Of a DNA stretch of 64,000 nucleotides, positions 5,844 to 64,000 are shown piece after piece. Origin of the DNA: Pelomyxa schiedti. Taxonomy: Eukaryota > Protista > Evosea. The stretch spans positions 70,234 to 134,233 of the forward strand of contig JAHLWZ010000804.1 in assembly GCA_020536535.1 (NCBI GenBank). The letters run 5' to 3'. Both the position numbers and the translations under genes were made by a program. Below the pieces are notes generated by a model, which searched no databases, was not told the DNA's origin, and saw only the letters and a program-made list of their open reading frames with translations. Each line of letters opens with the position of its first letter. The first letter of the stretch is position 1.

Positions 5844-8800
5844 TTACTGGAAATTGAATGAACCGTGCTTGTCAAACACAGCCAATACTGTGCCCCCATC
5901 CTCCGTCAGAATAACTACACGGCCCGTGTTGCCGTGCTTGTGAGGGGACCCACCTCTGCCGGAGGGCATGGCCCAGTGTGGGTCGCTTTCGTTGGCCGCG
6001 TCTACTACGCACGTGGTTGCATTGTGGCACACTGGCTGGTGAAGCCCAACAACGCTGCCGCTGCCCCCGCCGCCCCCGCCGCCGCACGCGATGTGGGAGT
6101 ACGCGTTCTGGCCGCCGCCGCCGCCGCCAAACCGCCCGCTGTTGGCGTGGTGCTGGTTGTCTCCACCATAGCCCCCAGTGTCACTTGTCCCCCACGCATC
6201 ACTGTTTGACGCCGCGCCGCCGCCGCCGCCGTTGCCATTGACCCCTGGGCCTCCATTGTGGGCGCAGTCCGCACCGGCGCCGCCGGAGCCAAGGTTCCCG
6301 ACGTAGGCCCCGCCGCCGCCGCCTCCACCAGCAAAGAAGGAGCCGCCTCCGCCGCCTCCGCCACCTCCACCTGCAGCCGCCAGTAGCTGATCCGTGCCCG
6401 TCTCGTGGATGAATGATGCTCCTCCACCTCCTCCTGCAGCATTCCGAGAACCTCCACTGCCACCACCTCCTCTCACACCGGATCCACCAGGGCTTTTGCT
6501 ATCTTCACCTGAGCCTCCACCACCCCCGTCACACCCTCCTTTTCCTTTCACACTGCCGCCTTCGCCAGAGCCACCATCCTCCCAGCAGCCACCATATCCT
6601 CCCACCGTTACTCTGAGTGATGAACCAGGCTTGACACTGACAACTCCAGATACAAAGCCGCCGCCTCCACCACAGGTATCCAAGCCATATCCTGAACCAC
6701 CACCAGCTCCCCACATCTTGACCATCAACTTCCTTGGCCCATTCTTTGTTGTGGTAGGTATTTGACGTCCTCTACTGGGTTCTACATGTAGATGAATTTA
6801 CAGGTTTAGAATTGAAATGCACATTACCTTCACTAGATGTACTATTGGGAGTCCTTAGTATTGATGCATAGGTGGGAGCCTGTGCAGGTTTCTGCTTTGG
6901 GGAGGCTGTTGAGTTTTGGCTTGGCGAAAACGGTTTAACTGTTGTGGGTGGTGATGGGGAAGGAGGAGCAATTGTTGAGGTGATGGAGACTGAAGGAGGG
7001 GATAGCTGTGGTTGCGTTAGAACCGTTGGTAAGGGAAGTGGCGGTGACAAAGGCACAAGAGGTGGACTTTCAGGCACAGGTATTGGTATTGGTATCGCCG
7101 CGGTAGTTTGCAGTTGGGTAGGCATTTGGTTGCTGGGACTGGTCAGTGTTGGAGAAAGGGGGTGCCGTACCCCCAAAGTTTGGTTCATGTTGCTGATGTT
7201 GATTATTGGTGGCAAAGTGACAGGGGGAAGTGGCCGTCTTTCATCTGTAACATCAAGTCAAATAAAAGAAAGATTGTATGAAGGAACAAACCAATGGTTT
7301 TTATCGCTATTGAGTCCAGGAAAGAAAAAACGAGTGGAGGGTTCTCCAAATAATACTGAAATTGCGGATAGTCTCCTTCCCTATGTGTTAAGCCTTCAAC
7401 AGAGAATGCCTAATTGAAAAGGGAAGTGAGATTATTAGGTTCCAACAAAATAGAAATGTACTTTCAAAATGTTGTTACATTCTGTGAGCGGCTCTGACCA
7501 GTCTCTGGAAACATAGGACTTGTTGGAGAGAATAGCTTCGAATCTCAATGCCATTGCCTGCAGCTGTACAGAGACTTTCTCAAGGTGACAATAACGTTCT
7601 TGGATGGAAAGATCTAGCTCAGTGATTAGGATAGAAGAAAGAGAAGAAAGTGCACTGAAAAACCATTGTAGGCTTTGAGTTGTTCTATCTGCCGCATTAA
7701 TTCGGTGCATTTCTCAGATGCTGCTCTTCGAATCTCCTCCATAGTGTTGGTCAACTCCATGCTTAATGCTTCAAGTGCCTTCATGGAAACAAAGTATGAC
7801 AAGCTTAGAAAGAAACCAAGTAATGACGTATAAACCTGATTTTGGTGAATAACTTCCTTTTGCAGGTCATTTCTGGCGTTCGATAGCAATACCGCTCGTG
7901 ACTTGAGTTCCTGAATCCCATTCAATAGCTCTTTTCTACACTGCTCTCCCCATTCATTGATGAGAACAACTTCGTGGCCTTTGTGAGACCCAAAGTTTGC
8001 ACACTCCAAACAGACTAAACATTTGCATGATCGGCAAAACAGCTTAAGTTGCTCTCGATGTTCCACACATCTTGGAGCATATGATAGAGGCGGTGCTGTT
8101 ACAGTCCCGCCGTCAATTCGGATCCGCTGGTGGGCACCAAGGGGACCTCGGTGGATGGTGTTATCGCACTTGGAACACATAACTGCCCCACAATCAGCAC
8201 ACTGAACAGTGGCTACTTCCAGACAATCCATTGAGCAAATGATTTTTTTCGGACCAGCTGGCAGAGGTTAAGAAAAAGGTTAAAAAGAGGAAGGGATACT
8301 TCTTTTATATTTTTCCACGAGAGCAGCCATCACTTGGTTCGGGGGAAGAGCTTCTTTCGTAGTCCTCGATTTGCTGATGAACATAACACTAGAGCAAGTG
8401 AGGCACACAATGGCATCGAACTCCTTATGTGTTTCCTGCTGGAAACAACCGATGTCAGCGAAATACCGTACAAACAAGACACTCCTACCAGATTAGTATT
8501 AGCGCTCGCGACCAGCGAGTAGTAGGAGCGCAAGTTGTCGGCGCAGTCGATGCACATTGTGTGGCCGCAGTTGAGCAGCACCGGCTTGTTGTACATCCTG
8601 CCGCACAACTTGCACACCACCTCATCCTCCTCACTCTGCCCCCCAATCACGCTCGCGGATTTAGCGGCTCCGCTGTTGCCGCCGCCCCCGCCGATCACGT
8701 TGCCGTTCACGTTCGCGTTCGCGGTGGCGTTGGCGTTTGCGTTTGCGTTGACGTTCACGTTCACGTTCGCGCCGCCGCCGCTTGCTGCCGATCCCGATGC

Positions 8801-16957: not shown

Positions 16958-18983
16958 ATGTATCAGCAATACGCTTACGCATCTCCGCATTCGCGAGTCC
17001 CTCTACTGCCTTCCCCAACTGCAATTCCCCGTGGAATGTACTACCCAATGGGATCTCCCCACGCGTCACAAGTAGTCCCAACATCACCGTCGCCCCACAT
17101 TTCCCAACAACAAATGCAGAACTTCCAACAACAGCAGTACTACGCACAACCTCAGTACGCACAATACACTCAATACCAGTACCCGCAGTATGCTCAGTAC
17201 CCCCAATATCAACAACATTCTTCTATGCACCCACAAGTGCATCACCACCAGCAACAACAGCACGTTCAGCACCACATTACAATCCAACAAGCGCAACACA
17301 CGTCTACGGCCCATAGTAAATCGGATTCAGCTGCATCTGCACCAAGACAGACTACAGAACCGGCAGAAACACCATTGGAAACTGCGAGCGCAACCTCACT
17401 TCCAGCATCTGAATCATTGGAATCGGCATCATCTCAGTCAACTGAACAACGAACAGAACCAGCACCCACCCTCATGCAGCCGTCTATGTTATTGTCTGGG
17501 CAACCTCTAAATCTTACAGATGTTGACTGGAAGAGCAGACACAAAACCGCTGTTTGTTCCTTTCCTTTCATCCAACTGCCTAATTCAAGTGAAGGATGTA
17601 ACAGCCACAAGAGGCATTGACTTTGAAGATTTTTATCTCAAGAGGGATCTTCTAATGGGGATTTATGCTAAAGGATACGAAAAGCCAAGCCCCATTCAAG
17701 AGGAAACCATCCCCATTGCCTTAGCCAAGTACGACATTCTTGCCAGGGCCAAGAACGGGACTGGTAAGACCGCTTCATTCTTGATTCCTGCTCTTGATCG
17801 GACTGATCCTAAATTTGACCACATTCAGGGTATGTGTTCCAACCAACTCAGTAACGTTTCACATATCCTAGTTCTCATTTTGGTGCCTACAAGAGAGTTG
17901 GCGTTACAGACCGCCCAGGAGTGCAAAGAACTTGCAAAGCACATGCCCAGCGTTCAAGTGATGGTGACTACAGGCGGGACTTCACTAAAAGAAGATATTG
18001 TCCGGCTATATTCACCTGTCCACATCCTAGTTGCCACCCCAGGAAGAGTTTTGGATCTTGCAAATAAAGGTGTCGCCAATCTCAACAAATGTGGAATTCT
18101 TATCATGGATGAGGTTACTCTCCTTTTTTTCCCGAGAATCAAACAAACCAACAACAGGCTGACAAACTCCTATCACCCGAGTTTCAACCTCTCGTTGAAG
18201 AGATCATTACATTCCTTCCTACGGATAGGCAAATACTTTTATTCAGTGCCACCTTCCCAATCACCGTCAAGGCCTTCAAAGATCGTTTCTTGCAAAAGCC
18301 TCATGAAATAAACTTGATGGACGAGTTGACATTAAAGGGCGTTACACAATATTATGCATTCGTTGAAGAGAGACAGAAAGTACACTGTTTGAACACTCTG
18401 TTTTCCAAGGTTCACTTTTTTGAGATTGGCTTCCCGTTACTGAACTAGATGATAGTTGACAATCTATCAATCTATCATCTTCTGCAACTCGGTCAACAGA
18501 GTTGAGCTTCTTGCAAAAAAGATCACTGAACTCGGATACTCTTGCTTCTTCATACACGCAAAAATGCTGCAAACACACCGAAACAGAGTTTTCCATGATT
18601 TCCGGAGTGGAAACTGCAGAAATTTAGTTTCCTCAGGTTCGCTTCACTCAGACACTTCGCTATCAAGCGTTTACACCCTTATTGCTAGATTTATGCACTA
18701 GAGGCATTGACATACCCGCGGTCAATGTAGTTATTAACTTCGATTTCCCCAAAAACTCCGGTAAATCACTCCTCTCTGTCCCCTTTTTTTCCGTAGCAAA
18801 CCCCTTCTTTCAGAGACTTACTTGCACCGGATTGGGCGTTCAGGAAGATTTGGTCACAGAGGGCTCGCCATAAACTTGATCACTTGCAATGACACATTTA
18901 ATCTGTACAAAATCGAGAAGGAGCTCAACACCACTATCAAACCAATTCCGGCACTCATCCCCCTGAAAGAGTACGCACTCTAA
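16958..18983 (+). CDS. DDX6: DEAD-box RNA helicase DDX6/Dhh1/Me31B with a Gln/Tyr/Pro-rich N-terminal extension
   Basis: [113 protein letters not shown]. Confidence 0.95.
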
Positions 18984-27968: not shown

Positions 27969-29259
27969 TTACATATTCCCTTTTCTTTCCCACCTCTCTT
28001 TGGATTCAAAGCTGTTGTAAAGAGGAAAAAAAAAACCATGAACTGGGAATAAAATGGTGTAGAGTATACCCCCATTGCAGACGTGGCCGCTTGAGCTTTC
28101 TTGAGTGTAGTTCCTCCTCTGCTTTTGCATCATCATAAGCCTTGCAATTTAGTGCCGCTACTAATTGTTTCTGGCGATGAGATTCAGATAGCCTGTCACT
28201 AAGGTTCGAAGCCGAGGCGAAATCACCATTACGTAGAGCTTGCCGAATTTCCTTTTCCTCTGGTGGCTGGAATTGGAAAATTTAGTGTCCCTCAAAATAT
28301 AAAGGAGGTACTTTACCACATCAACCAAGGGGCCCTGTGGAACATCCTTCAATTGCGGGTTTGGATCCAGGTATTTCCAGATATCAGTCCGGCTGACACA
28401 TTGAGGGTCCATGTGTTTCTTTGAATCACTGGAGCCCAAATTTCGCTGCCCACTGTTCCGGAATGCTGTATTAGAGGGTTCAATCAGTGATTCCGATGTG
28501 GGGCTGGTCTTTGTGTGTGGAGAATCCAAGTCATTAATATCACCAGCAAGAGCGCTATTAACTGTGTACTTGGTGGGGAAAAAAAACCAGTAATAATGTT
28601 ATTCCCTTGTCCCATGTGCATACATTTAAACAAAACAAAACAAAACAAAACAAAACAAAACAAAACAAAACAAAACAAAACAAAACAAAACAAAACAAAA
28701 CAAAACAAAACAAAACAAAACAAAACAAACAACAAACAACAAACAACAAACAACAAACAACAAACAACAAACAACAAACAACAAACAACAAACAACAAAC
28801 AACAAACAACAATGGTCGTAGTAGAAACGCACCCTTCTTTTGAATGAGCTTTCGTAAGTTCTTAACTCTCTTATGGGACATTGAATGAGCCAAAGCGTCC
28901 CTCCGCGCCCTGCACGCCTCCACCCTCCTCGCCAATTGTAACTGCAACTCCAATTGCCCCTGCACTTGCACTTGCTGGTTCTGTTGGTGCTCTTGATCCA
29001 ATTGACTCGGTGAGGGGGTAAGTGACTCGCCTAAGATGGCACCGCCGTCGTCGCACTTGGAACCCCTGTCGGCGTCTGCCGCTGGGGTGGCAGCGCTCAG
29101 TGGGCCCCCACCACCCTCGCTGTGTTGTTGCGGTTCTGAGTAGTGGCACTCGTGTTGTGGGAGGGGTGCACAGCTCGAGTTGGAAATGGTAGCCGATGCT
29201 GCAGTTGTGGAATGATCGTCGTCATGGTCGCCCGGAAGCTCAGTAACTCCGAGTGACAT
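27969..29259 (-). CDS. FAM204A: FAM204A-like protein; start uncertain
   Basis: Spliced C-terminus EKEIRQALRNGDFASASNLSDRL...KRPRLQW/GFESKERWERKGNM* matches the FAM204A C-terminal WGFExKxRWE.K.NM signature. Confidence 0.7.
28631..28809. repeat. Compound intronic microsatellite (CAAAA)19 directly followed by (CAAACAA)12
   Basis: Counted directly. It lies inside a minus-strand GT-AG intron of the FAM204A-like gene. Confidence 0.95.
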
Positions 29260-29545: not shown

Positions 29546-32500
29546 CTAGGCGTCCCCTCGGTCTTTGCCCTTCCCGTCGTCCTCCTCTTCATCGTCATCT
29601 GACCCGTTCCGTTTGATAAGCTCTACCTTGACCTCGGTTTCGGCGGGCTTGAAGCCGAGCTTGGCCTTGATTCTGCCGATTATGCCGAGTCCTTCATCCT
29701 TGAACTTTCTTGGTTCATAGGCAGGAACTGGTATTCGGGTTCCAATAAGTCCTGTTGTTGCTTTAGTGGAGTCGGAGTTCGGGTAAATCATTTACCTAGT
29801 GGGAGCGTAATCACTGCAATAGCTAAGCAGGTGATCCATTGCGAGAAGTTGAGTCCTGGGAAAGGTGCCACACTCATCCACTCGCCGGCAAAGGTAACAA
29901 TAATCACTTGAATGACTACTGTGACACCAACAATCAAGAGGAACATCCAGTTGGTCCATATTTTCTCCCAAACATTCCACTCTATTTTTTTGTGTTAGCC
30001 CAAGCAAGTAGGGGTGGTAAACGAACCATTGTTCACTTTTCTTGAATTAACTTCATTGCATACTTGGCAGAACACGAACGTATTAAAGATAACCGTTTGA
30101 AGGAGGAGAGTTTGCTCGGATATTTCGAAGTCAAATGCTCTGTGCTGGCCTGCTGCACAATAGTCGTCGGCAGGGTACACACCTCCCTCAGTATTTGCTA
30201 TGGGAAGAGTTAACCTTTTTATCACTTAGCAAAACCATACAAAGGCAACAAGTGGATGTAAGAGTAGTGCTGAGAGGGTCATTATAATCCGTGTAGGCAC
30301 AACTTACACCAAGCCATGGGAAGAATCTGCCCGCATACAGAAGAATAAGCAATACCATTAACTGAGCAGAAATAAGAACAAGAATGAAACGGGAGTGAGA
30401 GAAGAAACCTGATAGGAAGCATGCAGAATTATATTGCGGAGCATAAAATTGGATATGAGCCTATCATAACGTCCAAACCTGAAGGGAGTTAATGTGAATT
30501 CTTTTATTTGAGACACAAACGGTTTGCGTTTAAGAAGGGCTTCTGTTGGCTTTTCAGTGCCTAAAGCAAGTGCGGCCATGGTGTCCATAATCATATTCAC
30601 CCATAGCAATTGAATTGCTTTTAGGCAAGCTCCTTTTTGTGTTACGGCACCAATAGCCACCACTGCAAGCGCAACCACATTGACTGTAAGTTGGAATTGC
30701 AGGAATTTCCGTATATTATCGTAGACACTTCTTCCCCACATCACTGACTTGACAATAGACTTGAAATTGTCATCCAGGATAACGATATCTACGCTCTTGA
30801 GCAATTATTTTGGTAGGTGGACAGCAAACCTGCTGCCTGTTTGGCAATATCAGTTCCTCTTAGACCCATTGCCAACCCAACATCAGCCGACTTAAGAGCT
30901 TGTACATCGTTGGTTCCATCGCCTGTCACTGCAACTACTTCACCCTGCTTGATCAAACTGGTCTACGTCAGAAAAAAAAATAGGAATAAATATTGACGGA
31001 GTACCATTTGACGAGCTTCTTCTTATCTGAGGGGGATGACCTTGCTAGGACTTGAAGCCGTGGTAAGATTTCATTTCGTTCCTGCTTTGTCATGGCAGCA
31101 AATTTGGGCCCCTCTAGAGAAACACCTCCAGGTGAAAGAATGTGGCAGTCTCTGGCAATATGTTCGGCAGTTAGAATATCTGGGTAAGTGAAGGAAAACA
31201 AGGGTGGGGTTCTTTTCCCCATCAAGGATACTGTCACCAGTGACCATCCTAACAGTAATTCCTGCATCCTGACAAGCTTTGACGGCAGCTGGCACCTCTG
31301 GTCTAAGAGGATCGTGGATACCAACAATTGCATAAAGTGTCAGGTTCATGTCTGGAGCAGTCTCATAAACAGCCTTGTTATCGTCCATAATGACATTTGG
31401 CTCGGCTGTAGAGTAAGCGTCATCCGTCGACTCCCCATCACCCTCTGCAGCCGCAGACTAAAGGGGGTGAAAAAAAAAACATACTGGGGTACTCAGTTAC
31501 CGTGTCGGTTTTGGCCTCAGCAATAGGTTGCACAGCCTTAGAGGCATCGGCAGCGGACTGGTCGCGATAAGCAAGACAGAGGGTCCTCAATCCTTTGGAA
31601 GCGTACCCTTCAATCTCCTCACCAATCTTCGACTTGAGTTCATTGGTTAGTTCAACCACATTAGCCTCTGCGTCTAGAACAGTAGAACAACGCCTAAGAA
31701 CAATCTCCGCAGCACCCTAAGTATGGTTGGGGGGAAAAGTATTTCGTAGGTCACATACTTTTACGTAGTGTCTGATCAACCCTTTACTCTGATCCAACCA
31801 AATGAGACAATTGCAACGCTTTCTTGCTGAACTGAAAGTAAATCGCTGGTAGATGTTGTCACTATTCTGATCACGTATTTGTTGGTAATTTGCGCCAAGT
31901 GCCTCGGCAAAGATAAGGAAGGCGCAGTCAGTTTTGTTCCCAACAGTTTCCTAGGAATGGACTGATTACTAAGATGACGAGGGAAAAAACCAACAAACCA
32001 CAGGTTTGCCCTCTTTGCGCAGAAGATTGGAACTATAGGCGCAATTCAATGCCGCATTTTCCGTAGTAAGCCGCAATACATGCTTGGGAATGTCAAATTT
32101 TGGGGGAACTTCGGGGAAATCTCTTCCACACAGCCAACCCTTGTTTAGGTTGGCGGAGTTACTGATGGAGAATGATAGAATACCCTGACGATTGTCATAC
32201 AATTTTCAGTGAGTGTACCAGTCTTATCAGAACAAATATCTTAGTCAGGGATTACACCAGAGATGGATAGAGGAAGGATGATACTTGTGCAGTTGGACAT
32301 GGTTTCACAAGCCTTGAGGTGTCTCACCAAATTCTTGTCGTGATACATTTGCTTCATTGAGTACGCCAAGGAAATTGTTACAGCAAGTGGTAGACCTTCA
32401 GGTACTGCAACAACCTTCCGTACTGTAAACAAATTGCTTGGAAAAAACTAATCACACGAACCACAATGGTAATGCCGATGATGATATAGTCGACAATACA

Positions 32501-34089
32501 GATTGCTTGAGCCCAGTCATAACCCAGGCATAAAAACTCCTCTCCAAAAGAAGTCATATCAGAGGGGGCATGTGTGCAGTGATCGTCAGCATATACCCAT
32601 TGACAGTCATACCTTCATTAAACTTAGACTAGGTATCATAATTAATAGTGCGTACAGGGCAGCAGGAATCACCCACCACACCGCAAGAACCAGAACGACA
32701 AAGGATGCAACTGCCATACCAAATTTTCCGATTGCTAAACAGGGAGAGGTTTATCTTCCGCTTTTGAAAAAGGGAAACAGCATACTGCCAGCAAGGTCAT
32801 CCAAATTTTCTTGCAGAGGTGTATCTGGCTTTTCGTCTTGCAGGGACTCCATAGTCTTTCCCCATTCAGTGTGGGGACCAACACCGCACGCTAGAATGTA
32901 TCCACTGCCATCCGTCAGCTAAAAGCAGGTAAGAAACAACTGCATCAAAGAAAATACTAACCTTATAACCAAGATGGATAAACGGTCGGGAGCCGTTAAT
33001 CTTCATATCAACCGTTTCTCCTGTCATTTTGCTAGAGTCAACTTTCATGCCTGTTTATCAATGAAAAATGGATTCACACACAGCCGGTTCAAATACCAAA
33101 CCCTGATATGTAAACAGAATCTGCAGGGATTTCATCACCTGTATCGAGAGCAATAACGTCCCCAACATTGACTTCCGCATAGGGAATGGTTTCCTGGGTG
33201 GCCGGTAAAACACAGTAGGAAAAGAATAATTCCTACCAATTGTCCTTCCCGAATAACTTTAACAGTCCTATCACGCTCCTCCTGGTTGGATAGAGCGCGA
33301 AACTGACGCTCTTTGGAGTAGTTGTTCCCCGCTGTGACTGTACTCGCTAGAATAACAGCACCAAGAATAGCAGCTCCCTCAATCCAACCTTTTGTTTGGA
33401 GGTATTGCCAGAAGCAAAAATGTTATTCTTGATTGCAATGAAAGGTTGCCTACTTGACTGTTGTTCACTAATGACTTCGCCTTCACTGGCAGTGACGTTC
33501 ACCAGGCACGCATCTTGGTATCCAAGGTCTTAGGGGAAAATTCAGTTTTGAAATCGGGAACACAAATACCCTACCAGCAGGAATTGCAAGTCCGAGGATG
33601 AGTGACACAATTGCAGCAATGATCAAGATGATCAAGGTTAAATCTTTGACTGCCTCGAACCACAGTTGAAAAAAGTTTTTGTGTTTCGCCTCAGGTAAAA
33701 CATTAATACCAAATCTAATGTAAAGTGATTTAGTCAGGAGGATTTCATATTCAATAAGAAATGAAAAAGAGGTTAATAAAACATACACGCGTCGCCTATG
33801 CACAAACTTCGAGTTGATTTCCTCTTGACCGAGTCCCGCTTTCAAACTTGTGCCCAGCTTGGCAGCCAGACCCTCGAGCCCTCCCATAGCTGTGAGTTCC
33901 TCCACTTTCCTTCAAATACTTTCTTACCCCCAAGAAACACAAACATTTGGTACAACAACGAGCACAACTACGCTCAACACAAGCATAACATGACAAACGC
34001 GACCAGATCTCAACAACGAAGGAACAACCAAGTACGTACTTGTGGAGCACCATCTCTTGGAGTTGGACGGCAGTTACAGTGAACTCCAT
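29546..34089 (-). CDS. Plasma-membrane-type Ca2+-transporting P-type ATPase (P2B; PMCA/PAT1)
   Basis: [137 protein letters not shown]. Confidence 0.95.
31180..31231 (-). other. Candidate U12-type GT-AG intron, 52 nt, phase 1, interrupting the GDN motif of the PMCA gene
   Basis: Donor GTATCCTTG; TTCCTTCAC lies 8 nt before the CAG end. Removal restores the invariant MVTGD-N-ILTA. Confidence 0.6.
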
Positions 34090-41624: not shown

Positions 41625-43464
41625 ATGAAGTTGTTGGCAAGGTAGTGGGAACCTCACACATATGAGAACCTTTTTAATTTAAACACATGCGAAGAGTCGA
41701 GGCAGTGCTGCGTTTCGACTGACATTAAAACGAAAGGGTGATAGATAAGAATGGACTTGGTTACGTGTCACTCATAGCCAATGGGCCTGAGGATCTGTGG
41801 CACACGTACCAGCTCCTGCAAGAAGGTGACAGAGTGAGAACAACAACTTTTAGGTTAGAATTGTTACCTACTATAGAAGTACTTGCTTGGTTCTTGTTGT
41901 CTAATCCAACAAATGGTTGTTCTGGGATGGGTTCTCTTTTTGTTTTTGATGACTATGGCTATGGACCTTTCTTGAATGCTTGTTAAAAACAAATTAGGAA
42001 AGTACAAACAGTATCCGCTACTGGTAGCACAGTATCTGAAAAGGTTAAGGTGACACTGACAATCCTTGTTAAGGTAACTGTTCAACTCTTGTATTCACCA
42101 CTAACAAGTACAAACTTGAAGCGTGTGGATTTTACCCCCGAAGCCGAGTTATTGCGTGTGAATGGCATCAATGTGACGGAATCTGATAAAGTCAAAGTTG
42201 GAGCATTCCATGCGCTTGATATCGAGTGCAACAGACAATTTTCCATTGAAAAAGATTTTTGGGATACTGTGGCATTAGAAAGGCATACTCGGGACACCAC
42301 TTAGCTCTCCTGACCATAATATAGAATATCTCTAGCAACTGATGCTGCCAAGACAGCGGAAGTGGCCGCAGTTGTTTTGGGTGACGGAATAGCTCACATT
42401 TGTCTTATAACTGACTGCATGACGGTAACAAGAGCCTCCATTGACACCCCCATTCCTAGAAAGCGGAAGGCGTCAGTTACTGGACACGAGAAAGTGGGTT
42501 CTTGTACTTTAAAACTCGTCAAGTTCATGTTTATACTGCAGGCATTGTCACGGTTTTTCGAGTCTGTTCTTCAGGCCATGATTAGGCACTTTGACTTTAG
42601 CATTGTGAAATGTGTCATTATTGCTAGCCCCGGCTTCGTTAAGGTATTTACCTATCTTGCAACTAGCAAGCATAATGGTTAAAGGATGAATTTATGGAAT
42701 ACATGTGGGCTGAGGTACAAAAGAGAGATTTAACACAACTATCCTCGAATAGAGCAAAATTCCTTGTGGCTCATTCCTCTTCTCCACATAGGTAAGTTAC
42801 GAGCTATTTACTCCAATTTGTCAATGTTCCTTAGATGTGCGCTCAAAGAAGTGTTGGAAGATCCAGCAGTTCTTGCTAAAATAGCCGATACCAAAGCTGC
42901 AGGCGAAGTTCGAACTCTGAATGAATTTTTCCAGGTACGTCACATTCTTATGGAATCCAGTCCCAATATCGCAGGTATTGAAAGCTGATCAGTACCGAGC
43001 GGTTTATGGCTTGCGTTATGTCAAGTTTGCTCATGAGAGGAGAGCAATAAAAACTTTGCTTGTCACAGACGATCTGTTTCGGTTTGTTAACCGGCATCCC
43101 TAGAAAACACACTAATCAATCAAACCAGGTCATGCAGTATAGAAACGAGAAGAGAGTATGTTCAGCTTGTTGAGAGTGTCAAAGCGGAAAGCGGTGAAGT
43201 GAGGGTATTCAGTTCTCTTCACGTCTCTGGTGAACGTATGCCTCCGGAATCAATCGCGAAATAGACACTTTTCTAAGCCACATGACAGAGCTCGGGAAGC
43301 TGACTGGGGTTGCTGCCATTCTCAGGTACCCCCTTCACGAGATAGACGATCTTGACGCCGACGGCGGTGACGAAAATTATGATGAAGAAGAGGAAGAGGA
43401 GGAGGAAAGAGGCACAGCCAAGGGCAGTAGCGACACGCTTGAAGGTGACTTCTCCGGCTACTGA
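41625..43464 (+). CDS. PELO: Pelota/Dom34 ribosome rescue factor
   Basis: MKLLAR...EDLWHTYQLLQEGDRVRTTTFRKVQ, KVGAFHALDIE, VAAVVLGDGIAHICL, IPRKRK, IIASPGFVK, LLVTDDLFR, VRVFSSLHVSGE, LGKLTGVAAILRYPL. Confidence 0.95.
42283..42324 (+). other. GC-AG intron (42 nt) in pelota
   Basis: AG|gcatac...atatag|A restores VALE-R-ISLATDAAKTAEVAAVV. No GT donor gives this frame. Confidence 0.75.
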
Positions 43465-43586
43465 GAGGCTCCCAAAAAAGGGTTTTGTGTGTATAAAAAA
43501 GCAACGCGTAAGAAGCGGATCTGGAAAATCCGGCAGAGAAAAAGACCAAAAAAAACACAACTTTTCGTTCCGCAAGCAGATCGTCG

Positions 43587-45088
43587 ATGGCTGGTGTTGG
43601 TGGGTCTAGTGTAGCGTACGAGGTGTGCGAACAGTTGTGCACCAGATTCACGCACAGGGGAGCGACTACGTCGAACGAATTGGATGCCGCATGTTTTTTG
43701 CAGAAGTACGCAACTCTTTTTTTTTTTTTGTGCGCGAGCACTCTTCTACTGTTTCTAGTTGTTTATATCAATGTGTCTAATGAAAACGTATGGTTAAAAA
43801 AAAACAAATAAAATAGAGGCATTGTACATGCCAACATCTCACAATAAACAAATAAATAAAGGAAGGTGGAACAGTTGATGCCCGGGGTACGGACCGAGTT
43901 AAGATCGTTTGCGTGCCAGCACACGTACTTGGTGTGGCTCTGGTGGGCCCTTGGATCTATACTGTTGTCGTTGCTGGTGTTCCCTAGGCTGATGGGGATT
44001 TCTACACTCTTGTCACTTTTGGTCCTCGCCTGGGTGTGGTGTGCCGGCCTTGGAGTCGTTTTTCAGCTGGATGGCAGAGACAACTTCTTATCTAAACTTC
44101 CTCCTGTGGGCTACTCTCACAACGTGATCGCGTTTATAAATCGCTCCACGGCGGTGGTGTGTAGCTGTGTACATCCGCTACCTTCATCTGACTAGAGCAG
44201 AAAAAAAATAAACTCATTCTGATGGCTCACTATGATAGTGCCCCTGCGAGCTTTCTGTACTTGCCTTCACAAGTATCCTTCCCATTCTCCGTTATTCTTA
44301 TTTTAACGTGATCCCAGGTAAAACATTTTTGTCGCTCCTTGAAGATTTCTGGCCTGGCACTTGTAATGGCCCCTGTGTCACTCACCATAGAGTATTTTGG
44401 CTTCTCGCAATACTGGACACGAATGGTTCTTCTTGCTTATTTGGCCGGGATGGTGATAATGTCCAGTGCAGATTACCTTGTCAGAGGATACACCAACGGT
44501 GCAGCCGACAATGCCAGTGGTGTAGGTGCCGCAGTTGAAGCAGCTTGTTCTCTGTTTCACCATCCACTCCCAGAAGACTGGGAGGTAGAACTAGTTTTAA
44601 CTGGTGCTGAAGAAGCCTTGTACAAGGTACCACTTGCCCCCTCATATTACTTTCCCTGATAGCAACAACTCCAACAGGGATCGCTGGCGTACTACCGTCA
44701 GATAAAGAATACTCACCAGAAGTTACATGTTGTCAATATCGACAACGTCGGAGCTGGCGACTCCATTGTTGTTGTTGATAAGACGGAATCCTACACACCT
44801 GTTTTCTACAACAAGCCCTGGAATTCCGTGTTCCAAACCAGTGCCGCCGTTGCTCAGAAAATACCAGGAGTCACAATTCGTGCTCACACCGTGGCTGACT
44901 TTGACAGTATTTTCTTTGCACGAAACAGAATTCCCTCTGTCACTATATCCGCGCAATGTAAGGATGGCACCATTCCCCAGCTTCACAGGCCTGGTGACAC
45001 CATGCAAAATGTCAACAAGGATTTGCTATCCAGGTGCACCCAAGTGGTTGAAACCATCTGCCGCCAACTGGCCAAACAAAGTGACTAG
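43587..45088 (+). CDS. Membrane-embedded M28-family metallopeptidase (prokaryote-like)
   Basis: HRGATTSNE, TM hairpins, AHYDSA, GAADNASGVG, TGAEE, VNIDNVG, DFD, LHRPGDT. Confidence 0.85.
44273..44317 (+). other. Candidate U12-type GT-AG intron, 45 nt, phase 0, in the M28 gene
   Basis: Donor GTATCCTTC; TTTTAAC lies 10 nt before the CAG end. It contains an in-frame TGA, so it must be removed (LPSQ/VKHF). Confidence 0.55.
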
Positions 45089-45278
45089 GCAAAATAATCA
45101 CCAAACAAGTCTTCCTTTGTTATTGATCAGAGAGGAAGAGGCGTAAGCCTAACAGTAGCTTCGACGCAGATAAGAGATTCAAAATGTGAAACGAATCGTG
45201 CGGCAGGGGGAAATTTCCCACAATAGCACGAGAAAAAGCTTGTAAGTCTAGCGAGCGGAGTGGTATTAAAGCTTCTTC

Positions 45279-45436
45279 ATACGTACCTGACTGTTGCAGA
45301 CCCCCGATCAAGAAGGGGGGTTTGTTGCCTCCCTCTTTGGAAGCTTGCACTTTCTTCCGAGGGCGGTATGACTCCCCGTAAGGAGAGATCAGCAGTGAAA
45401 TTTATTGCGGTGGGTGCTGCGTTCGTCGCGGCACCC
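45279..45436 (+). ncRNA. U1: U1 spliceosomal snRNA with variant 5' arm (AUACGUACCUG)
   Basis: 5' AUACgUACCUG. Helix H ACUGU/GCAGU. SL1 stem closing the U1-70K loop GAUCAAGAAG (45306-45315). SL2 with the U1A-type loop CUUGCACUUU (45344-45353). SL3 with a GUAA loop. Sm-like site AAAUUUAUUG (45398-45407). SL4 GGGUGCUGCG-UUCGU-CGCGGCACCC (45412-45436). Length 158 nt. Confidence 0.93.
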
Positions 45437-45545
45437 TTCAAAACAAAATTAAAAAACATCTAACGAACCGTTCGTTTTCTGTTGGCGTAGTTTCCCTGCT
45501 GCGGCATACAGATCCAAATTAATAAAAAAAAAAACCCATTACGCC

Positions 45546-61863: not shown

Positions 61864-64000
61864 TCAAGAGCATTTTCTAACAACAAAAGAAGCTCTGACT
61901 TGGTGGTGATATTCCTTCTGTTCATCGAGTGCTGTTAACTGATCTCCAGGTTGGTGAGTGTAATTGAGGCGGCCCCATAATAAACGGTCCAGCACACAGG
62001 AAAGATGTGCACATAACTGGTCCAGTGTGTTGTAGTAAAACCGTGGAAGGCCCCTCTCAAGTGGATACCACCCGAAATTATTATCGGACACTGCCACTGC
62101 GTGAGGTGGGCCATACTGAGGATCATAGAGCCAAACTGTAGGACTTTCAGGCCATCGCCTTGCAATTCTGGTACCGTATGGAACGAACGGTTTCGCAGGG
62201 AATGCCTGTGGAGTTGAATTGTTGTTTGAGAGGGAGAATTTGAGAAAAGGACTTGCTTGCTGGTGGGCCTCAGGTGAGGCCACTACTGTGTAAACAGGAG
62301 CTCCAATACTGGAACAGCGAACGAAGCAGGATGGCACTGTCGCTGTTCTTAGAGAAGTTACACTATGCTGATGTTCCAATAAACCATGAAACCACCTTGT
62401 TTTTTGGTTGTAAGTCCAACATAATACAATCATACATACACTTTTCGCCAGTCCTCAACTACCTCCTGCAATTGAGTTAGAAAGATTGTAACAAATATGG
62501 GAACAGACCTGGTCCCAATAAGGACCATCTGGGCTTGGGTGCATTAGGTACTCACAGAGGGTTGTCCAGTCTTTCTGCTTTATCTTGCCACCATCCATAG
62601 AAACTATTATCATTGAGTGCTGTAGATAGGTATTGCGAAAAGAAAGACAGACCTAGCTCACATAACCATTTCCTGGTAGATACAGGAAGAATCTCTTTTT
62701 GGTAAAACTTATCCCAGGATCCAATGGAAGCGGTTTTAAACAGTGCAGACCAAGTACTAGTGGCCCACTGCTGCACAGGCGAAATTTGATCCGATGGGGA
62801 TACAGTTGTCAAGTGTGTGGGTTCACACACGTTGCACCCATCACAAAATTTGCACGGTTTATTGGGCTTACATTCGTCACATGGGGGACAGGTGCATGAC
62901 TCGTTGCACCACAGCGGGCACCTGGAACAGGGGTGCCGGCCCCGGCAGTTGTAGCTGCAATTGATTTAGTTGTTTGCTGAACTTGTCGTTATACCAGAAA
63001 TGAAAGCCGCAAGAGGGGCAGCCACCATTGGGGCCGATATGATGGCACCCATGGTACCTTTTTTTGTGTTTGGTTGGAAAAAAAAAAAGGAGGTTGCCTG
63101 TACTTGAAATGCACAATTGGAGTGTGACAGCGAGGACACGTCTTTCCCGAAAGAGAAGGTGATAGGGTGGCCTCTGGTCCAGGTGTAGTTTGTCTGGTCG
63201 GAAGAGTCGTTTGTAACGTAATTACCGTGGCAATGGTGGAAGCACTGTATATTATAATATTTATAAGGACCGTGCTGCACAGAGAAGAAAGATTACGGTT
63301 TGCTTTGGGACACTGAAGGGTCCGAATCAGCAAGAGGGATCGAATTATAATGGCAAAGCTCTTCATGAGCAGAAATTTTCCTCCCAGGAAATATCAGTTT
63401 TTGTTTGAAACATGGAATATTTGTCTGCTTTTCAATTAGGCATTTCAGTATTGTAGGAGTGTCATCATCATGAATCTAAAATACAGTGTAAAGAGAAATC
63501 AGAGTAAAAAGGGAGATACGTAAACGGTAATATTTCGGGGGCCTCTTATGCTGAGTGGGTGAGAGCGAAACCGCACTGGTATGGTCATGGTTCGACACCA
63601 GTGACCTACATATTCTAGGTAAAAATATCCTCCGCTTGTTCCTGGCAAACTACGCAAGTGTATTTCTTTTATTCCCCATAGTAAGGCCTCGGTATTAGGA
63701 ATTGGATATTGCGTACCTTACATGCAGGACATTGAACAAAATTGCGATCAAAAGTACTGGGGATAATGAATCTAGAGCACGTTGGAACAGCGCAATTGAT
63801 ACCACATAGGCCCATATTCTACTTCTGGGTAATAGGTTGTGAAATGGAAGAAAGGTTTACAGATGCAGATTTGGAGGCTAAATCCATGAAGATATTGTAG
63901 TACTTAGGTCCCAGAAGTTGAAGTATCTGGATATCATGCACAAAAACTTGGCAGCCAGCTTTTATTACGTTGCTTATTATCGAAAGTTATTGCGAAGGGC
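61864..64000 (-). pseudogene. Paralog of the Parkin-like RBR gene (RING1 end, IBR, Ubl, Rcat, Cys tail) with an extra C-terminal SH2-like domain; frameshifted in the IBR exon; 5' part outside window
   Basis: AGCQVFVHDIQILQLLG; CPACK/KYTCVVC; IHDDDT..LKCLIEKQTNIPCFKQ; CPRCHTPIVHFKYHGCHHI..GCPSCGFHFCYNC..HPCSRC...CDECK..KPC..CDGCNVCEP; WFHGLL...CFVRCSS...YTV...YNTLDQL. The frame breaks at about 63625-63640. Confidence 0.7.

What the first reader, a model, noticed from the sequence alone, without database searches (positions are those of the whole stretch)
45279..45436. U1 snRNA with a rewired 5' splice-site recognition arm (G at position 5) matching GUACGU donors
Seen in sequence: a complete U1 fold (helix H, U1-70K loop GAUCAAGAAG, U1A loop UUGCAC, SL3, Sm-like site, UUCG-type SL4) in a short intergenic gap that the ORF track misses. 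Its 5' end is AUACGUACCUG rather than the near-universal AUACUUACCUG. Established: U1 position 5 (normally pseudouridine) pairs with intron position +4, so this RNA is complementary to CAG|GUACGUAU instead of CAG|GUAAGUAU. Seen: GTACGT donors occur at PMCA intron 1 (34039, minus), pelota (CAG|GTACGT at 42935, 9 contiguous pairs), PEX1 (51995, minus) and the coiled-coil gene (41264), with GTACGC at 63716 (minus). Canonical GTAAGT donors also exist (e.g. 1541, 42791). Inference: either this lineage has co-evolved U1 and donor consensus, or it uses several U1 isoforms specialised for donor subclasses.
Basis: partly seen in the sequence, partly recalled or inferred. Interest (0 to 1): 0.9.

Follow-up and report, generated by a model that had tools for sequence, protein, structure and literature searches.

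The report
Archamoeba-type U1 snRNA with G5 arm
This is a genuine U1 spliceosomal RNA gene whose splice-site-reading arm has G instead of U at position 5, which fits this amoeba's pyrimidine-rich (+4 U or C) intron starts; the same variant was already described in the related Mastigamoeba balamuthi, so it extends a known case.

Summary
Rfam U1 (RF00003) matches 45279-45437 (+) full length at 75.7 bits (cut-off 69.5), with the U1-70K loop, U1A loop, Sm site and SL4. The 5' end reads AUACGUACCUG.

G5 is not an assembly error. Two DNA runs show no other letter there. The assembly graph shows a second U1 locus with the same arm and a similar upstream element.

The GUACGU reading holds only in part. 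Among 36 evidence-backed introns from four genes, position +4 is U 18, C 10, A 5, G 3. GTACGT occurs twice and GTAAGT never. The consensus is G|GUWYGY, and introns are about 45 nt.

G5 can pair with C (Watson-Crick) or U (wobble), which covers 78% of donors. Predicted duplexes are stronger with G5 than with U5 for 25 of 36 donors (p=0.003).

It is not new in kind. Roy and Bowser (bioRxiv 2022) reported the same ACGUAC arm in Mastigamoeba balamuthi, paired with +4C donors. The window is probably Pelomyxa schiedti, of the sister family Pelomyxidae, so this is a new member.

One environmental contig carries a diverged U1 with the identical arm and compensatory stem changes.

Expression, and the absence of a canonical U1 elsewhere in the genome, could not be tested.

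The parts
45279..45437 (+). U1 snRNA gene (159 nt)
   Evidence: Rfam RF00003, 75.7 bits against a cut-off of 69.5, full-length model match. Stable fold, z=-4.7.
45279..45289 (+). 5' splice-site recognition arm AUACGUACCUG; G5 is at 45283 (canonical U1 has U/pseudouridine here)
   Evidence: Sequence. No alternative letter in two DNA runs at word depth of about 50-85. The identical 14-nt 5' end occurs in the environmental U1 of L004.
45251..45263 (+). Upstream element GCGAGCGGAGTGG at -28 to -16, followed by the A/T-rich TATTAAA; candidate proximal promoter element
   Evidence: The second U1 locus has GCGAGCGGGGTGG at the same distance from the same start (loose end). It is the only exact match in the window. 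Function is inferred.
45306..45315 (+). SL1 loop GAUCAAGAAG (U1-70K binding motif)
   Evidence: Aligned to the Rfam consensus GAUCAaGAAG. Conserved in L004 while the stem changes by compensatory substitutions.
45345..45350 (+). SL2 loop UUGCAC (U1A binding motif)
   Evidence: Rfam alignment. Invariant between the window and L004.
45398..45407 (+). Sm-like site AAAUUUAUUG between SL3 and SL4
   Evidence: Rfam alignment. AATTTAT is conserved in L004.
45410..45436 (+). SL4, GC-rich hairpin with a UUCGU loop
   Evidence: Fold and Rfam alignment.
42935..42974 (+). RNA-confirmed 40-nt intron with donor cag|GUACGU; 9 of 9 pairs with the G5 arm
   Evidence: Joint in an RNA contig of run X3. Boundaries. 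Pairing.
29597..34089 (-). PMCA-type Ca-ATPase gene with 23 introns used for the donor matrix (intron 1 donor at 34039 is GUACGU)
   Evidence: Spliced alignment to the homologue P0001. Exon ends agree with the mRNA contig L019 of a related organism.
17525..18977 (+). DDX6/Dhh1 helicase gene, 6 introns used for the donor matrix
   Evidence: Spliced alignment to 5 homologues. Five introns were found with all 5, one with 3 of 5.
43082..44677 (+). Six further RNA-confirmed short introns
   Evidence: Joints in RNA contigs of X3 and X4.

Best explanation
This is a functional U1 snRNA gene of an archamoebid amoeba, probably Pelomyxa schiedti (Pelomyxidae). Its 5' arm carries the lineage-typical substitution U5 to G (ACGUAC instead of ACUUAC). 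In the standard U1:5'ss register, nucleotide 5 faces intron position +4. G there forms a Watson-Crick pair with +4C and a wobble pair with +4U. This genome's tiny introns (about 45 nt) begin with a degenerate G|GUWYGY in which +4 is a pyrimidine in about 78% of cases, with U more frequent than C, and A is rare. The arm therefore suits the local donor population better than a canonical arm would. Shown here: gene identity, the G5 base, a second copy with the same arm, the donor composition and the predicted pairing gain. Inferred: expression, that this is the only U1 type in the genome, and that pairing at +4 matters for splicing.
For: U1 identity comes from Rfam above the gathering score with all protein-binding motifs and a stable fold. 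G5 is real: no alternative letter appears in two DNA runs, and a 36-nt node (45275-45310) of the assembly graph is entered from a second, different upstream sequence that carries a similar GCGAGCGG.GTGG element, so there are at least two U1 loci with the same arm. An environmental eukaryotic contig (L004, identical to L010 and L018) has an Rfam U1 (70 bits) with the identical first 14 nt. Against the window U1 it shows 14 base pairs changed on both sides in SL1 and SL2, so the arm is conserved while the stems drift. There are 36 evidence-backed introns: 7 from RNA joints, 23 from PMCA and 6 from DDX6. Their donor counts are +3 A23/U12, +4 U18/C10/A5/G3, +5 G23 and +6 U19/C12. Mean RNAduplex energy with the donors is -5.8 kcal/mol for the G5 arm, against -4.6 for U5, -4.8 for A5 and -4.3 for C5. 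G5 is better than U5 for 25 donors and worse for 10 (Wilcoxon p=0.003). Precedent: M. balamuthi has a U1 with ACGUAC and +4C donors (Roy and Bowser, bioRxiv 10.1101/2022.06.08.495308). Lineage: the best named DDX6 hit is Mastigella eilhardi, a pelomyxid. The run metadata fit BioProject PRJNA672820.
Against: No RNA contig covers the U1 (depth 0 at 45200-45399 in X3 and X4), although assembled contigs do not show absence. The rest of the genome could not be searched, so a canonical U1 may exist. Information content at +4 is low (0.29 bit), and the excess of pyrimidines over intron-interior composition is modest (78% against 61%, p=0.027). The C:U ratio at +4 equals the background ratio, so there is no sign of selection specifically for the Watson-Crick partner C. 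The same optimisation logic would predict G at U1 position 3 (+6 is U or C), yet it is A. The sample is 36 introns, 23 of them from one gene. Pseudouridine is not modelled in the energies.
Confidence: 0.75

Rival explanations
1. This is a variant isoform beside a canonical U1. The genome would also hold ACUUAC U1 genes, and the G5 copies would serve only the +4Y subclass of donors, or have a non-splicing role, as proposed for human variant U1s and as seen in the mixed standard and ACAUAC copies of Physarum.
For: Only 64 kb of the genome was visible. Eight of 36 donors have +4 A or G and pair better with a canonical arm. Physarum is reported to have both types.
Against: The second locus detected in the assembly graph has the same G5 arm. 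No contig with another letter at 45283 was laid at 95% or higher likeness. In M. balamuthi a flexible search gave one clear candidate, with ACGUAC. GTAAGT is 0 of 36 among verified donors.
Confidence: 0.12
2. The U1 is functional but G5 is neutral. Donors in these 45-nt introns would be recognised mainly through GU, +3, +5, intron length and later U6 pairing (+4U pairs with the U6 ACAGAGA box). The +4 pyrimidine bias would simply mirror the T/C-rich intron composition, and the U1 substitution drifted in because +4 pairing is unimportant.
For: Information at +4 is low (0.29 bit). The enrichment over interior composition is modest (p=0.027) and the C:U ratio equals background. Thecamonas and Micromonas have +4Y donors with a standard U1, and yeasts keep ACUUAC with GUAUGU donors.
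Against: The arm, including G5, is identical in two paralogues and in a diverged environmental U1 whose stems have changed, and in M. balamuthi. That pattern indicates purifying selection on G5. G is the best of the four bases for the observed donors. +4A is below its interior frequency (14% against 24%).
Confidence: 0.1
3. This is a silent pseudogene or an assembly or sequencing artefact at position 45283.
For: No transcript evidence was found.
Against: The Rfam match is full length, with all loops, the Sm site and stable stems intact. A shared upstream element occurs in a second copy. Two runs agree with no variant letter. Two other organisms have the same arm.
Confidence: 0.03

Closest known systems
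Mastigamoeba balamuthi U1 snRNA candidate (Roy and Bowser 2022, bioRxiv 10.1101/2022.06.08.495308)
   Same: The recognition sequence is identical: ACGUAC in place of ACUUAC, with G facing intron +4. Both have classical U1 hallmarks. Both come from free-living, intron-rich Archamoebae, and in both the donors disfavour +4A.
   Different: M. balamuthi donors prefer GUGCGC, with +4C dominant and +3G, in a 60.7% GC genome whose introns average 137 bp. Here +4U (50%) exceeds +4C (28%), +3 is A or U, the window is 45.5% GC and introns are about 45 nt. So the G5:+4 contact would mostly be a G.U wobble. The two belong to different families (Pelomyxidae and Mastigamoebidae).
Entamoeba U1 snRNA with AACAAAC arm
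   Same: It is an archamoebid U1 whose arm changed at the positions facing +3 and +4, in step with the donors. GUUUGU, the Entamoeba consensus, is also the single commonest hexamer here (4 of 36).
   Different: Entamoeba changed two bases (A5, A6) and has a nearly invariant GUUUGUU in an intron-poor genome. Here only position 5 changed, and the donors are degenerate in an intron-rich genome.
Canonical U1 snRNA (Rfam RF00003; AUACUUACCUG with pseudouridine at positions 5 and 6)
   Same: The four-stem architecture, U1-70K and U1A loops, Sm site and 10 of 11 arm nucleotides are shared.
   Different: Position 5 is G instead of U/pseudouridine. This removes the pair with +4A and creates pairs with +4C and +4U.
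Physarum polycephalum U1 variants (ACAUAC) and human variant U1 snRNAs
   Same: They are U1 genes with substitutions in the 5'ss-pairing arm.
   Different: Those coexist with canonical U1 copies. Here both detectable copies carry the variant, and no canonical copy was seen, although the genome was not searched.

Membership tests
U1 spliceosomal snRNA (Rfam RF00003) | Covariance-model score at or above the curated gathering score, over the full model length | tested here: met
   75.7 bits against 69.5, model positions 1-166, E=6e-17.
U1 spliceosomal snRNA (Rfam RF00003) | SL1 loop with the U1-70K site, SL2 loop with the U1A site (UUGCAC), an Sm site before SL4 | tested here: met
   GAUCAAGAAG, UUGCAC and AAAUUUAUUG are aligned to the consensus. 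They are conserved against L004 while the stems covary.
U1 spliceosomal snRNA (Rfam RF00003) | Single-stranded 5' arm complementary to the organism's 5' splice sites | tested here: met
   On average 6.2 of 9 positions pair in the canonical register with 36 verified donors. Duplex energy is better than with any other base at position 5.
U1 spliceosomal snRNA (Rfam RF00003) | Expressed, TMG-capped, Sm-bound RNA | not testable with these tools
   RNA contigs of X3 and X4 do not cover the locus.
Archamoebid G5 (ACGUAC) U1 type of Roy and Bowser | ACGUAC in place of ACUUAC | tested here: met
   compared.
Archamoebid G5 (ACGUAC) U1 type of Roy and Bowser | The host is an archamoebid | tested here: inconclusive
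   The best named DDX6 relative is Mastigella eilhardi, a pelomyxid. Run metadata, intron density and assembly size fit Pelomyxa schiedti, PRJNA672820. M. balamuthi is excluded by GC content and intron size. No rRNA or direct organism label was available.
Archamoebid G5 (ACGUAC) U1 type of Roy and Bowser | Donor sites prefer C at +4 (Watson-Crick partner of G5) | tested here: not met
   +4 C is 10 of 36 and U is 18 of 36. Pyrimidines are preferred, but not C specifically. This feature describes the M. balamuthi donor consensus rather than the RNA itself.
Variant-U1 isoform system (canonical plus variant copies) | Coexistence of canonical and variant arms in one genome | not testable with these tools
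   Only the window and one graph branch were visible, and both copies are G5.

The most novel reading that the evidence does not exclude
G5 may work as a reader of either pyrimidine at intron +4, pairing with C by Watson-Crick and with U by wobble, and may be the ancestral archamoebid state. Pelomyxa would then preserve an evolutionary intermediate: a degenerate GUWYGY donor set containing both GUACGU and Entamoeba-like GUUUGU, read by ACGUAC. From that state Entamoeba's ACAAAC arm and GUUUGUU donors would have arisen by further steps, rather than independently from ACUUAC. This would turn the two independent co-evolution events of Roy and Bowser into one stepwise trajectory.
Probability: 0.35. 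Interest if true: 0.6.

Novelty: new member of a known kind. Interest (0 to 1): 0.45.

Why it matters
Changes in the U1 arm that track changes in splice-site consensus are very rare. Most lineages with +4 pyrimidine donors keep the canonical arm. A second archamoebid family with the same G5 arm dates the change at least to the common ancestor of Pelomyxidae and Mastigamoebidae. It also shows that the arm is under selection, because it stays identical while the stems covary. Finally, it supplies a genome in which the partner position is mostly U. That raises a testable question: does a G.U wobble at +4 contribute to 5' splice-site choice in an intron-rich genome with very short introns? The genome already has about 149,000 annotated introns, so the genome-wide test is a small computation.

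Tried and rejected
1. Ab initio intron harvesting. ORF-joining candidates gave no length peak above background. A home-made Viterbi gene finder recovered 22 of 30 known introns, but its novel calls had only about 30% +5G, so most were false, and self-training ran away to 938 introns. Both were discarded, and only RNA- or homology-backed introns were used.

2. Whole-window hexamer counts show no enrichment of any GTANGT, so they are uninformative.

3. An exact look-up of a window ORF in public gene calls found nothing.

4. Of 18 metagenome loci matching the arm-plus-loop pattern, 15 are not U1, with no Rfam hit at E<0.1.

5. The organism of L004 could not be identified. Pfam hits and the protein atlas were not taxonomically informative.

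6. The supplement of the M. balamuthi genome paper is not held, so the two U1 sequences could not be aligned directly.

7. Literature searches for the exact arm sequence, and for Pelomyxa plus U1, found nothing beyond Roy and Bowser.

8. Earlier scan notes mention no other U1 in this genome.

Full report
**Observation**

Rfam cmscan of the whole window returns a single hit. It is U1 (RF00003) at 45279-45437 on the + strand, at 75.7 bits (gathering score 69.5), E=6e-17, covering model positions 1-166 without truncation.

The sequence begins ATACGTACCTG, so position 5 (window 45283) is G where the consensus has U. The alignment places these features as in canonical U1:
- the U1-70K loop GAUCAAGAAG (45306-45315);
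- the U1A loop UUGCAC (45345-45350);
- an Sm-like AAAUUUAUUG (45398-45407);
- a GC-rich SL4.

The RNA folds at -71.3 kcal/mol, 4.7 sd below shuffles.

**Is G5 real, and is this a lone copy?**

Contigs from two DNA runs of one sample cover the locus at word depth of about 50-85 with no alternative letter.

The assembly graph branches exactly at the U1:
- A 36-nt node (45275-45310) is entered both by the window's upstream contig and by another contig (1178 nt in X1, 901 nt in X2).
- The last 30 nt of that other contig before the node read GGACTTGCGAGCGGGGTGGGTTTTAGACA(A/C).
- This differs from the window (19 of 30 identical) but keeps the core GCGAGCGG.GTGG at the same distance from the start.
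- The graph branches again after 45310, inside the variable position of the SL1 loop.

This is the signature of at least one paralogous U1 gene with the same 5' arm and a shared upstream element. That element occurs only once in the window.

The two RNA runs are assembled contigs from single-cell libraries. They do not cover the U1, which neither shows nor excludes expression.

**What the donors really look like**

I collected only introns backed by evidence independent of donor positions +3 to +6:
- Seven come from joints in RNA contigs at 42.9-44.7 kb.
- Twenty-three come from a protein-to-genome spliced alignment of the PMCA-type ATPase gene (29597-34089, minus strand) with a 1109-aa homologue found by an exhaustive HMMER search. 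That homologue sits on intron-free JGI contigs of about 3.5 kb, which I read as metatranscriptome assemblies. One of them, the contig L019 (72-87% nucleotide identity), confirms the exon ends.
- Six come from the DDX6/Dhh1 gene, aligned with five homologues.

The resulting matrix of 36 introns:

| Position | Counts |
|---|---|
| -1 | G 22 |
| +3 | A 23, U 12, G 1 |
| +4 | U 18, C 10, A 5, G 3 |
| +5 | G 23 |
| +6 | U 19, C 12 |

Median intron length is 45 nt. GTACGT accounts for 2 of 36 donors, GTACGC for 2 and GTAAGT for none. GTTTGT (4) and GTATGT (3) are the commonest.

The donor consensus is therefore a degenerate G|GUWYGY, not GUACGU. Position +4 is a pyrimidine in 78% of donors, against 61% in intron interiors (p=0.027). 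+4A is 14% against 24% in interiors. The C:U ratio at +4 equals the background ratio.

An earlier scan note on another piece of this genome (s1-383354) also remarked on relaxed donors lacking -1G and +5G, which agrees with this degenerate matrix.

**Fit between arm and donors**

By established knowledge of the U1:5'ss duplex, U1 nucleotide 5 faces intron position +4. G5 pairs with +4C (Watson-Crick) and +4U (wobble), which covers 28 of 36 donors. A canonical U5 would pair with 8 of 36.

Mean RNAduplex energies with the 36 donors:

| Base at position 5 | Mean energy (kcal/mol) |
|---|---|
| G5 | -5.8 |
| U5 | -4.6 |
| A5 | -4.8 |
| C5 | -4.3 |

G5 beats U5 for 25 donors and loses for 10 (Wilcoxon p=0.003). 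G is therefore the best of the four bases for this donor population.

Caveats:
- Pseudouridine is not modelled.
- 23 of the introns come from one gene.
- The same logic would favour G at arm position 3, which is A.
- Information at +4 is low (0.29 bit).

**Relatives**

I scanned JGI metagenome contigs for ATACGTACCTG, then 10-24 nt, then GATCANGAAG. The scan gave 18 loci.

- Three identical contigs (L004, L010, L018; 55% GC, eukaryotic, with tRNA genes beside the RNA) carry an Rfam U1 at 70 bits. The other 15 are not U1.
- That U1 shares the first 14 nt, both protein-binding loops and the Sm core with the window U1.
- 14 stem pairs in SL1 and SL2 are changed on both sides. The arm, including G5, is thus held constant while the helices drift, as expected under purifying selection.
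- I could not identify the organism of L004.

**Which organism**

- The runs that hold the window are two 2021 libraries of one organism plus 2023 single-cell RNA libraries labelled protist metagenome, all in the same study. This matches BioProject PRJNA672820 of Pelomyxa schiedti, which holds the single-cell genome and later transcriptomes tailed with poly(A) in vitro to capture the bacterial symbionts' transcripts as well.
- The published assembly is 52.4 Mb with N50 of 51.5 kb and 7.4 introns per gene. It includes PEX1 and anaerobic Fe-S proteins, which fit the window.
- The best named relative of the window's DDX6 is Mastigella eilhardi, a pelomyxid.
- Mastigamoeba balamuthi is excluded: its genome is 60.7% GC with introns averaging 137 bp, against 45.5% GC and about 45 nt here.

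I treat Pelomyxa schiedti as probable, not proven.

**Comparison with what is known**

Roy and Bowser (bioRxiv 10.1101/2022.06.08.495308) searched Amoebozoa with a U1 model relaxed at the arm. They reported:
- Entamoeba U1 has AACAAAC, matching GUUUGUU donors.
- M. balamuthi U1 has ACGUAC, which they note pairs with GUACGU. Its EST-derived donors prefer GUGCGC, so +4C pairs with the new G.
- Thecamonas, Micromonas and 69 yeasts have +4 pyrimidine donors but a canonical arm.
- Physarum has mixed copies.

The G5 arm and its co-evolution reading are therefore already described for the sister family. No paper in the library mentions a Pelomyxa U1.

The preferred archamoebid topology places Pelomyxidae as sister to Mastigamoebidae (PMC10711303). 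So the substitution dates at least to their common ancestor. Whether Entamoeba's arm derives from ACGUAC is open.

**Verdict**

This is a real, very probably functional U1 gene carrying the archamoebid G5 arm. It is a new member of a known kind. Three details are new:
- the partner position is mostly U, so the contact would be a wobble;
- at least two gene copies share the arm;
- an environmental third instance shows conservation of the arm.

Two things were not testable here: expression and the cap, and the absence of a canonical U1 elsewhere in the genome. Both, and the genome-wide donor logo, are small computations on public data.

Noticed in passing
L019, L020, L021 (JGI contigs Ga0265426_1028201, Ga0265425_1002162, Ga0079082_1014436): Three environmental contigs of about 3.5 kb each encode an intron-free 1109-aa PMCA. 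It is 72-87% identical at nucleotide level to the window's exons. They look like mRNA of a related pelomyxid-like amoeba in JGI metatranscriptomes. Such samples may also hold its snRNAs.
   Followed up: partly
L004:217-1479 and 1638-1803 (the same in L010 and L018): In the environmental eukaryote, the G5-type U1 gene lies about 160 nt from a tRNA gene, with a second tRNA about 1.3 kb away. The contig also carries a Harbinger-type DDE transposase ORF and an AlkD-like DNA alkylation repair gene split by introns.
   Followed up: no
window 28490-28900: A short-period repeat gives runs of CCLLFVV / FCFVL in one frame and KQNKT in another. It is a microsatellite-like stretch just downstream of the PMCA gene.
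   Followed up: no
window 5847-6797 (-): A 317-codon open frame is extremely rich in glycine runs. It had the highest codon-usage score in the window and no Pfam hit.
   Followed up: no
window 43706-43861 (+): An RNA-confirmed intron of 156 nt is three times the usual length. It ends in AAG rather than the usual YAG, and its donor is GUACGC.
   Followed up: no
window 44155-44201 (+): Two RNA contigs report the same 44-nt intron with joints one base apart (44155/44200 and 44156/44201), the latter with one extra A. This is probably alignment ambiguity or a contig end in a poly(A) stretch rather than alternative splicing.
   Followed up: no
window 45062-45090 (+): RNA contigs of the upstream peptidase-like gene end here in Nextera adaptor sequence. 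The mRNA 3' end therefore lies about 190 nt before the U1 start, and the U1 sits in a gap of about 450 nt between two protein-coding genes.
   Followed up: partly
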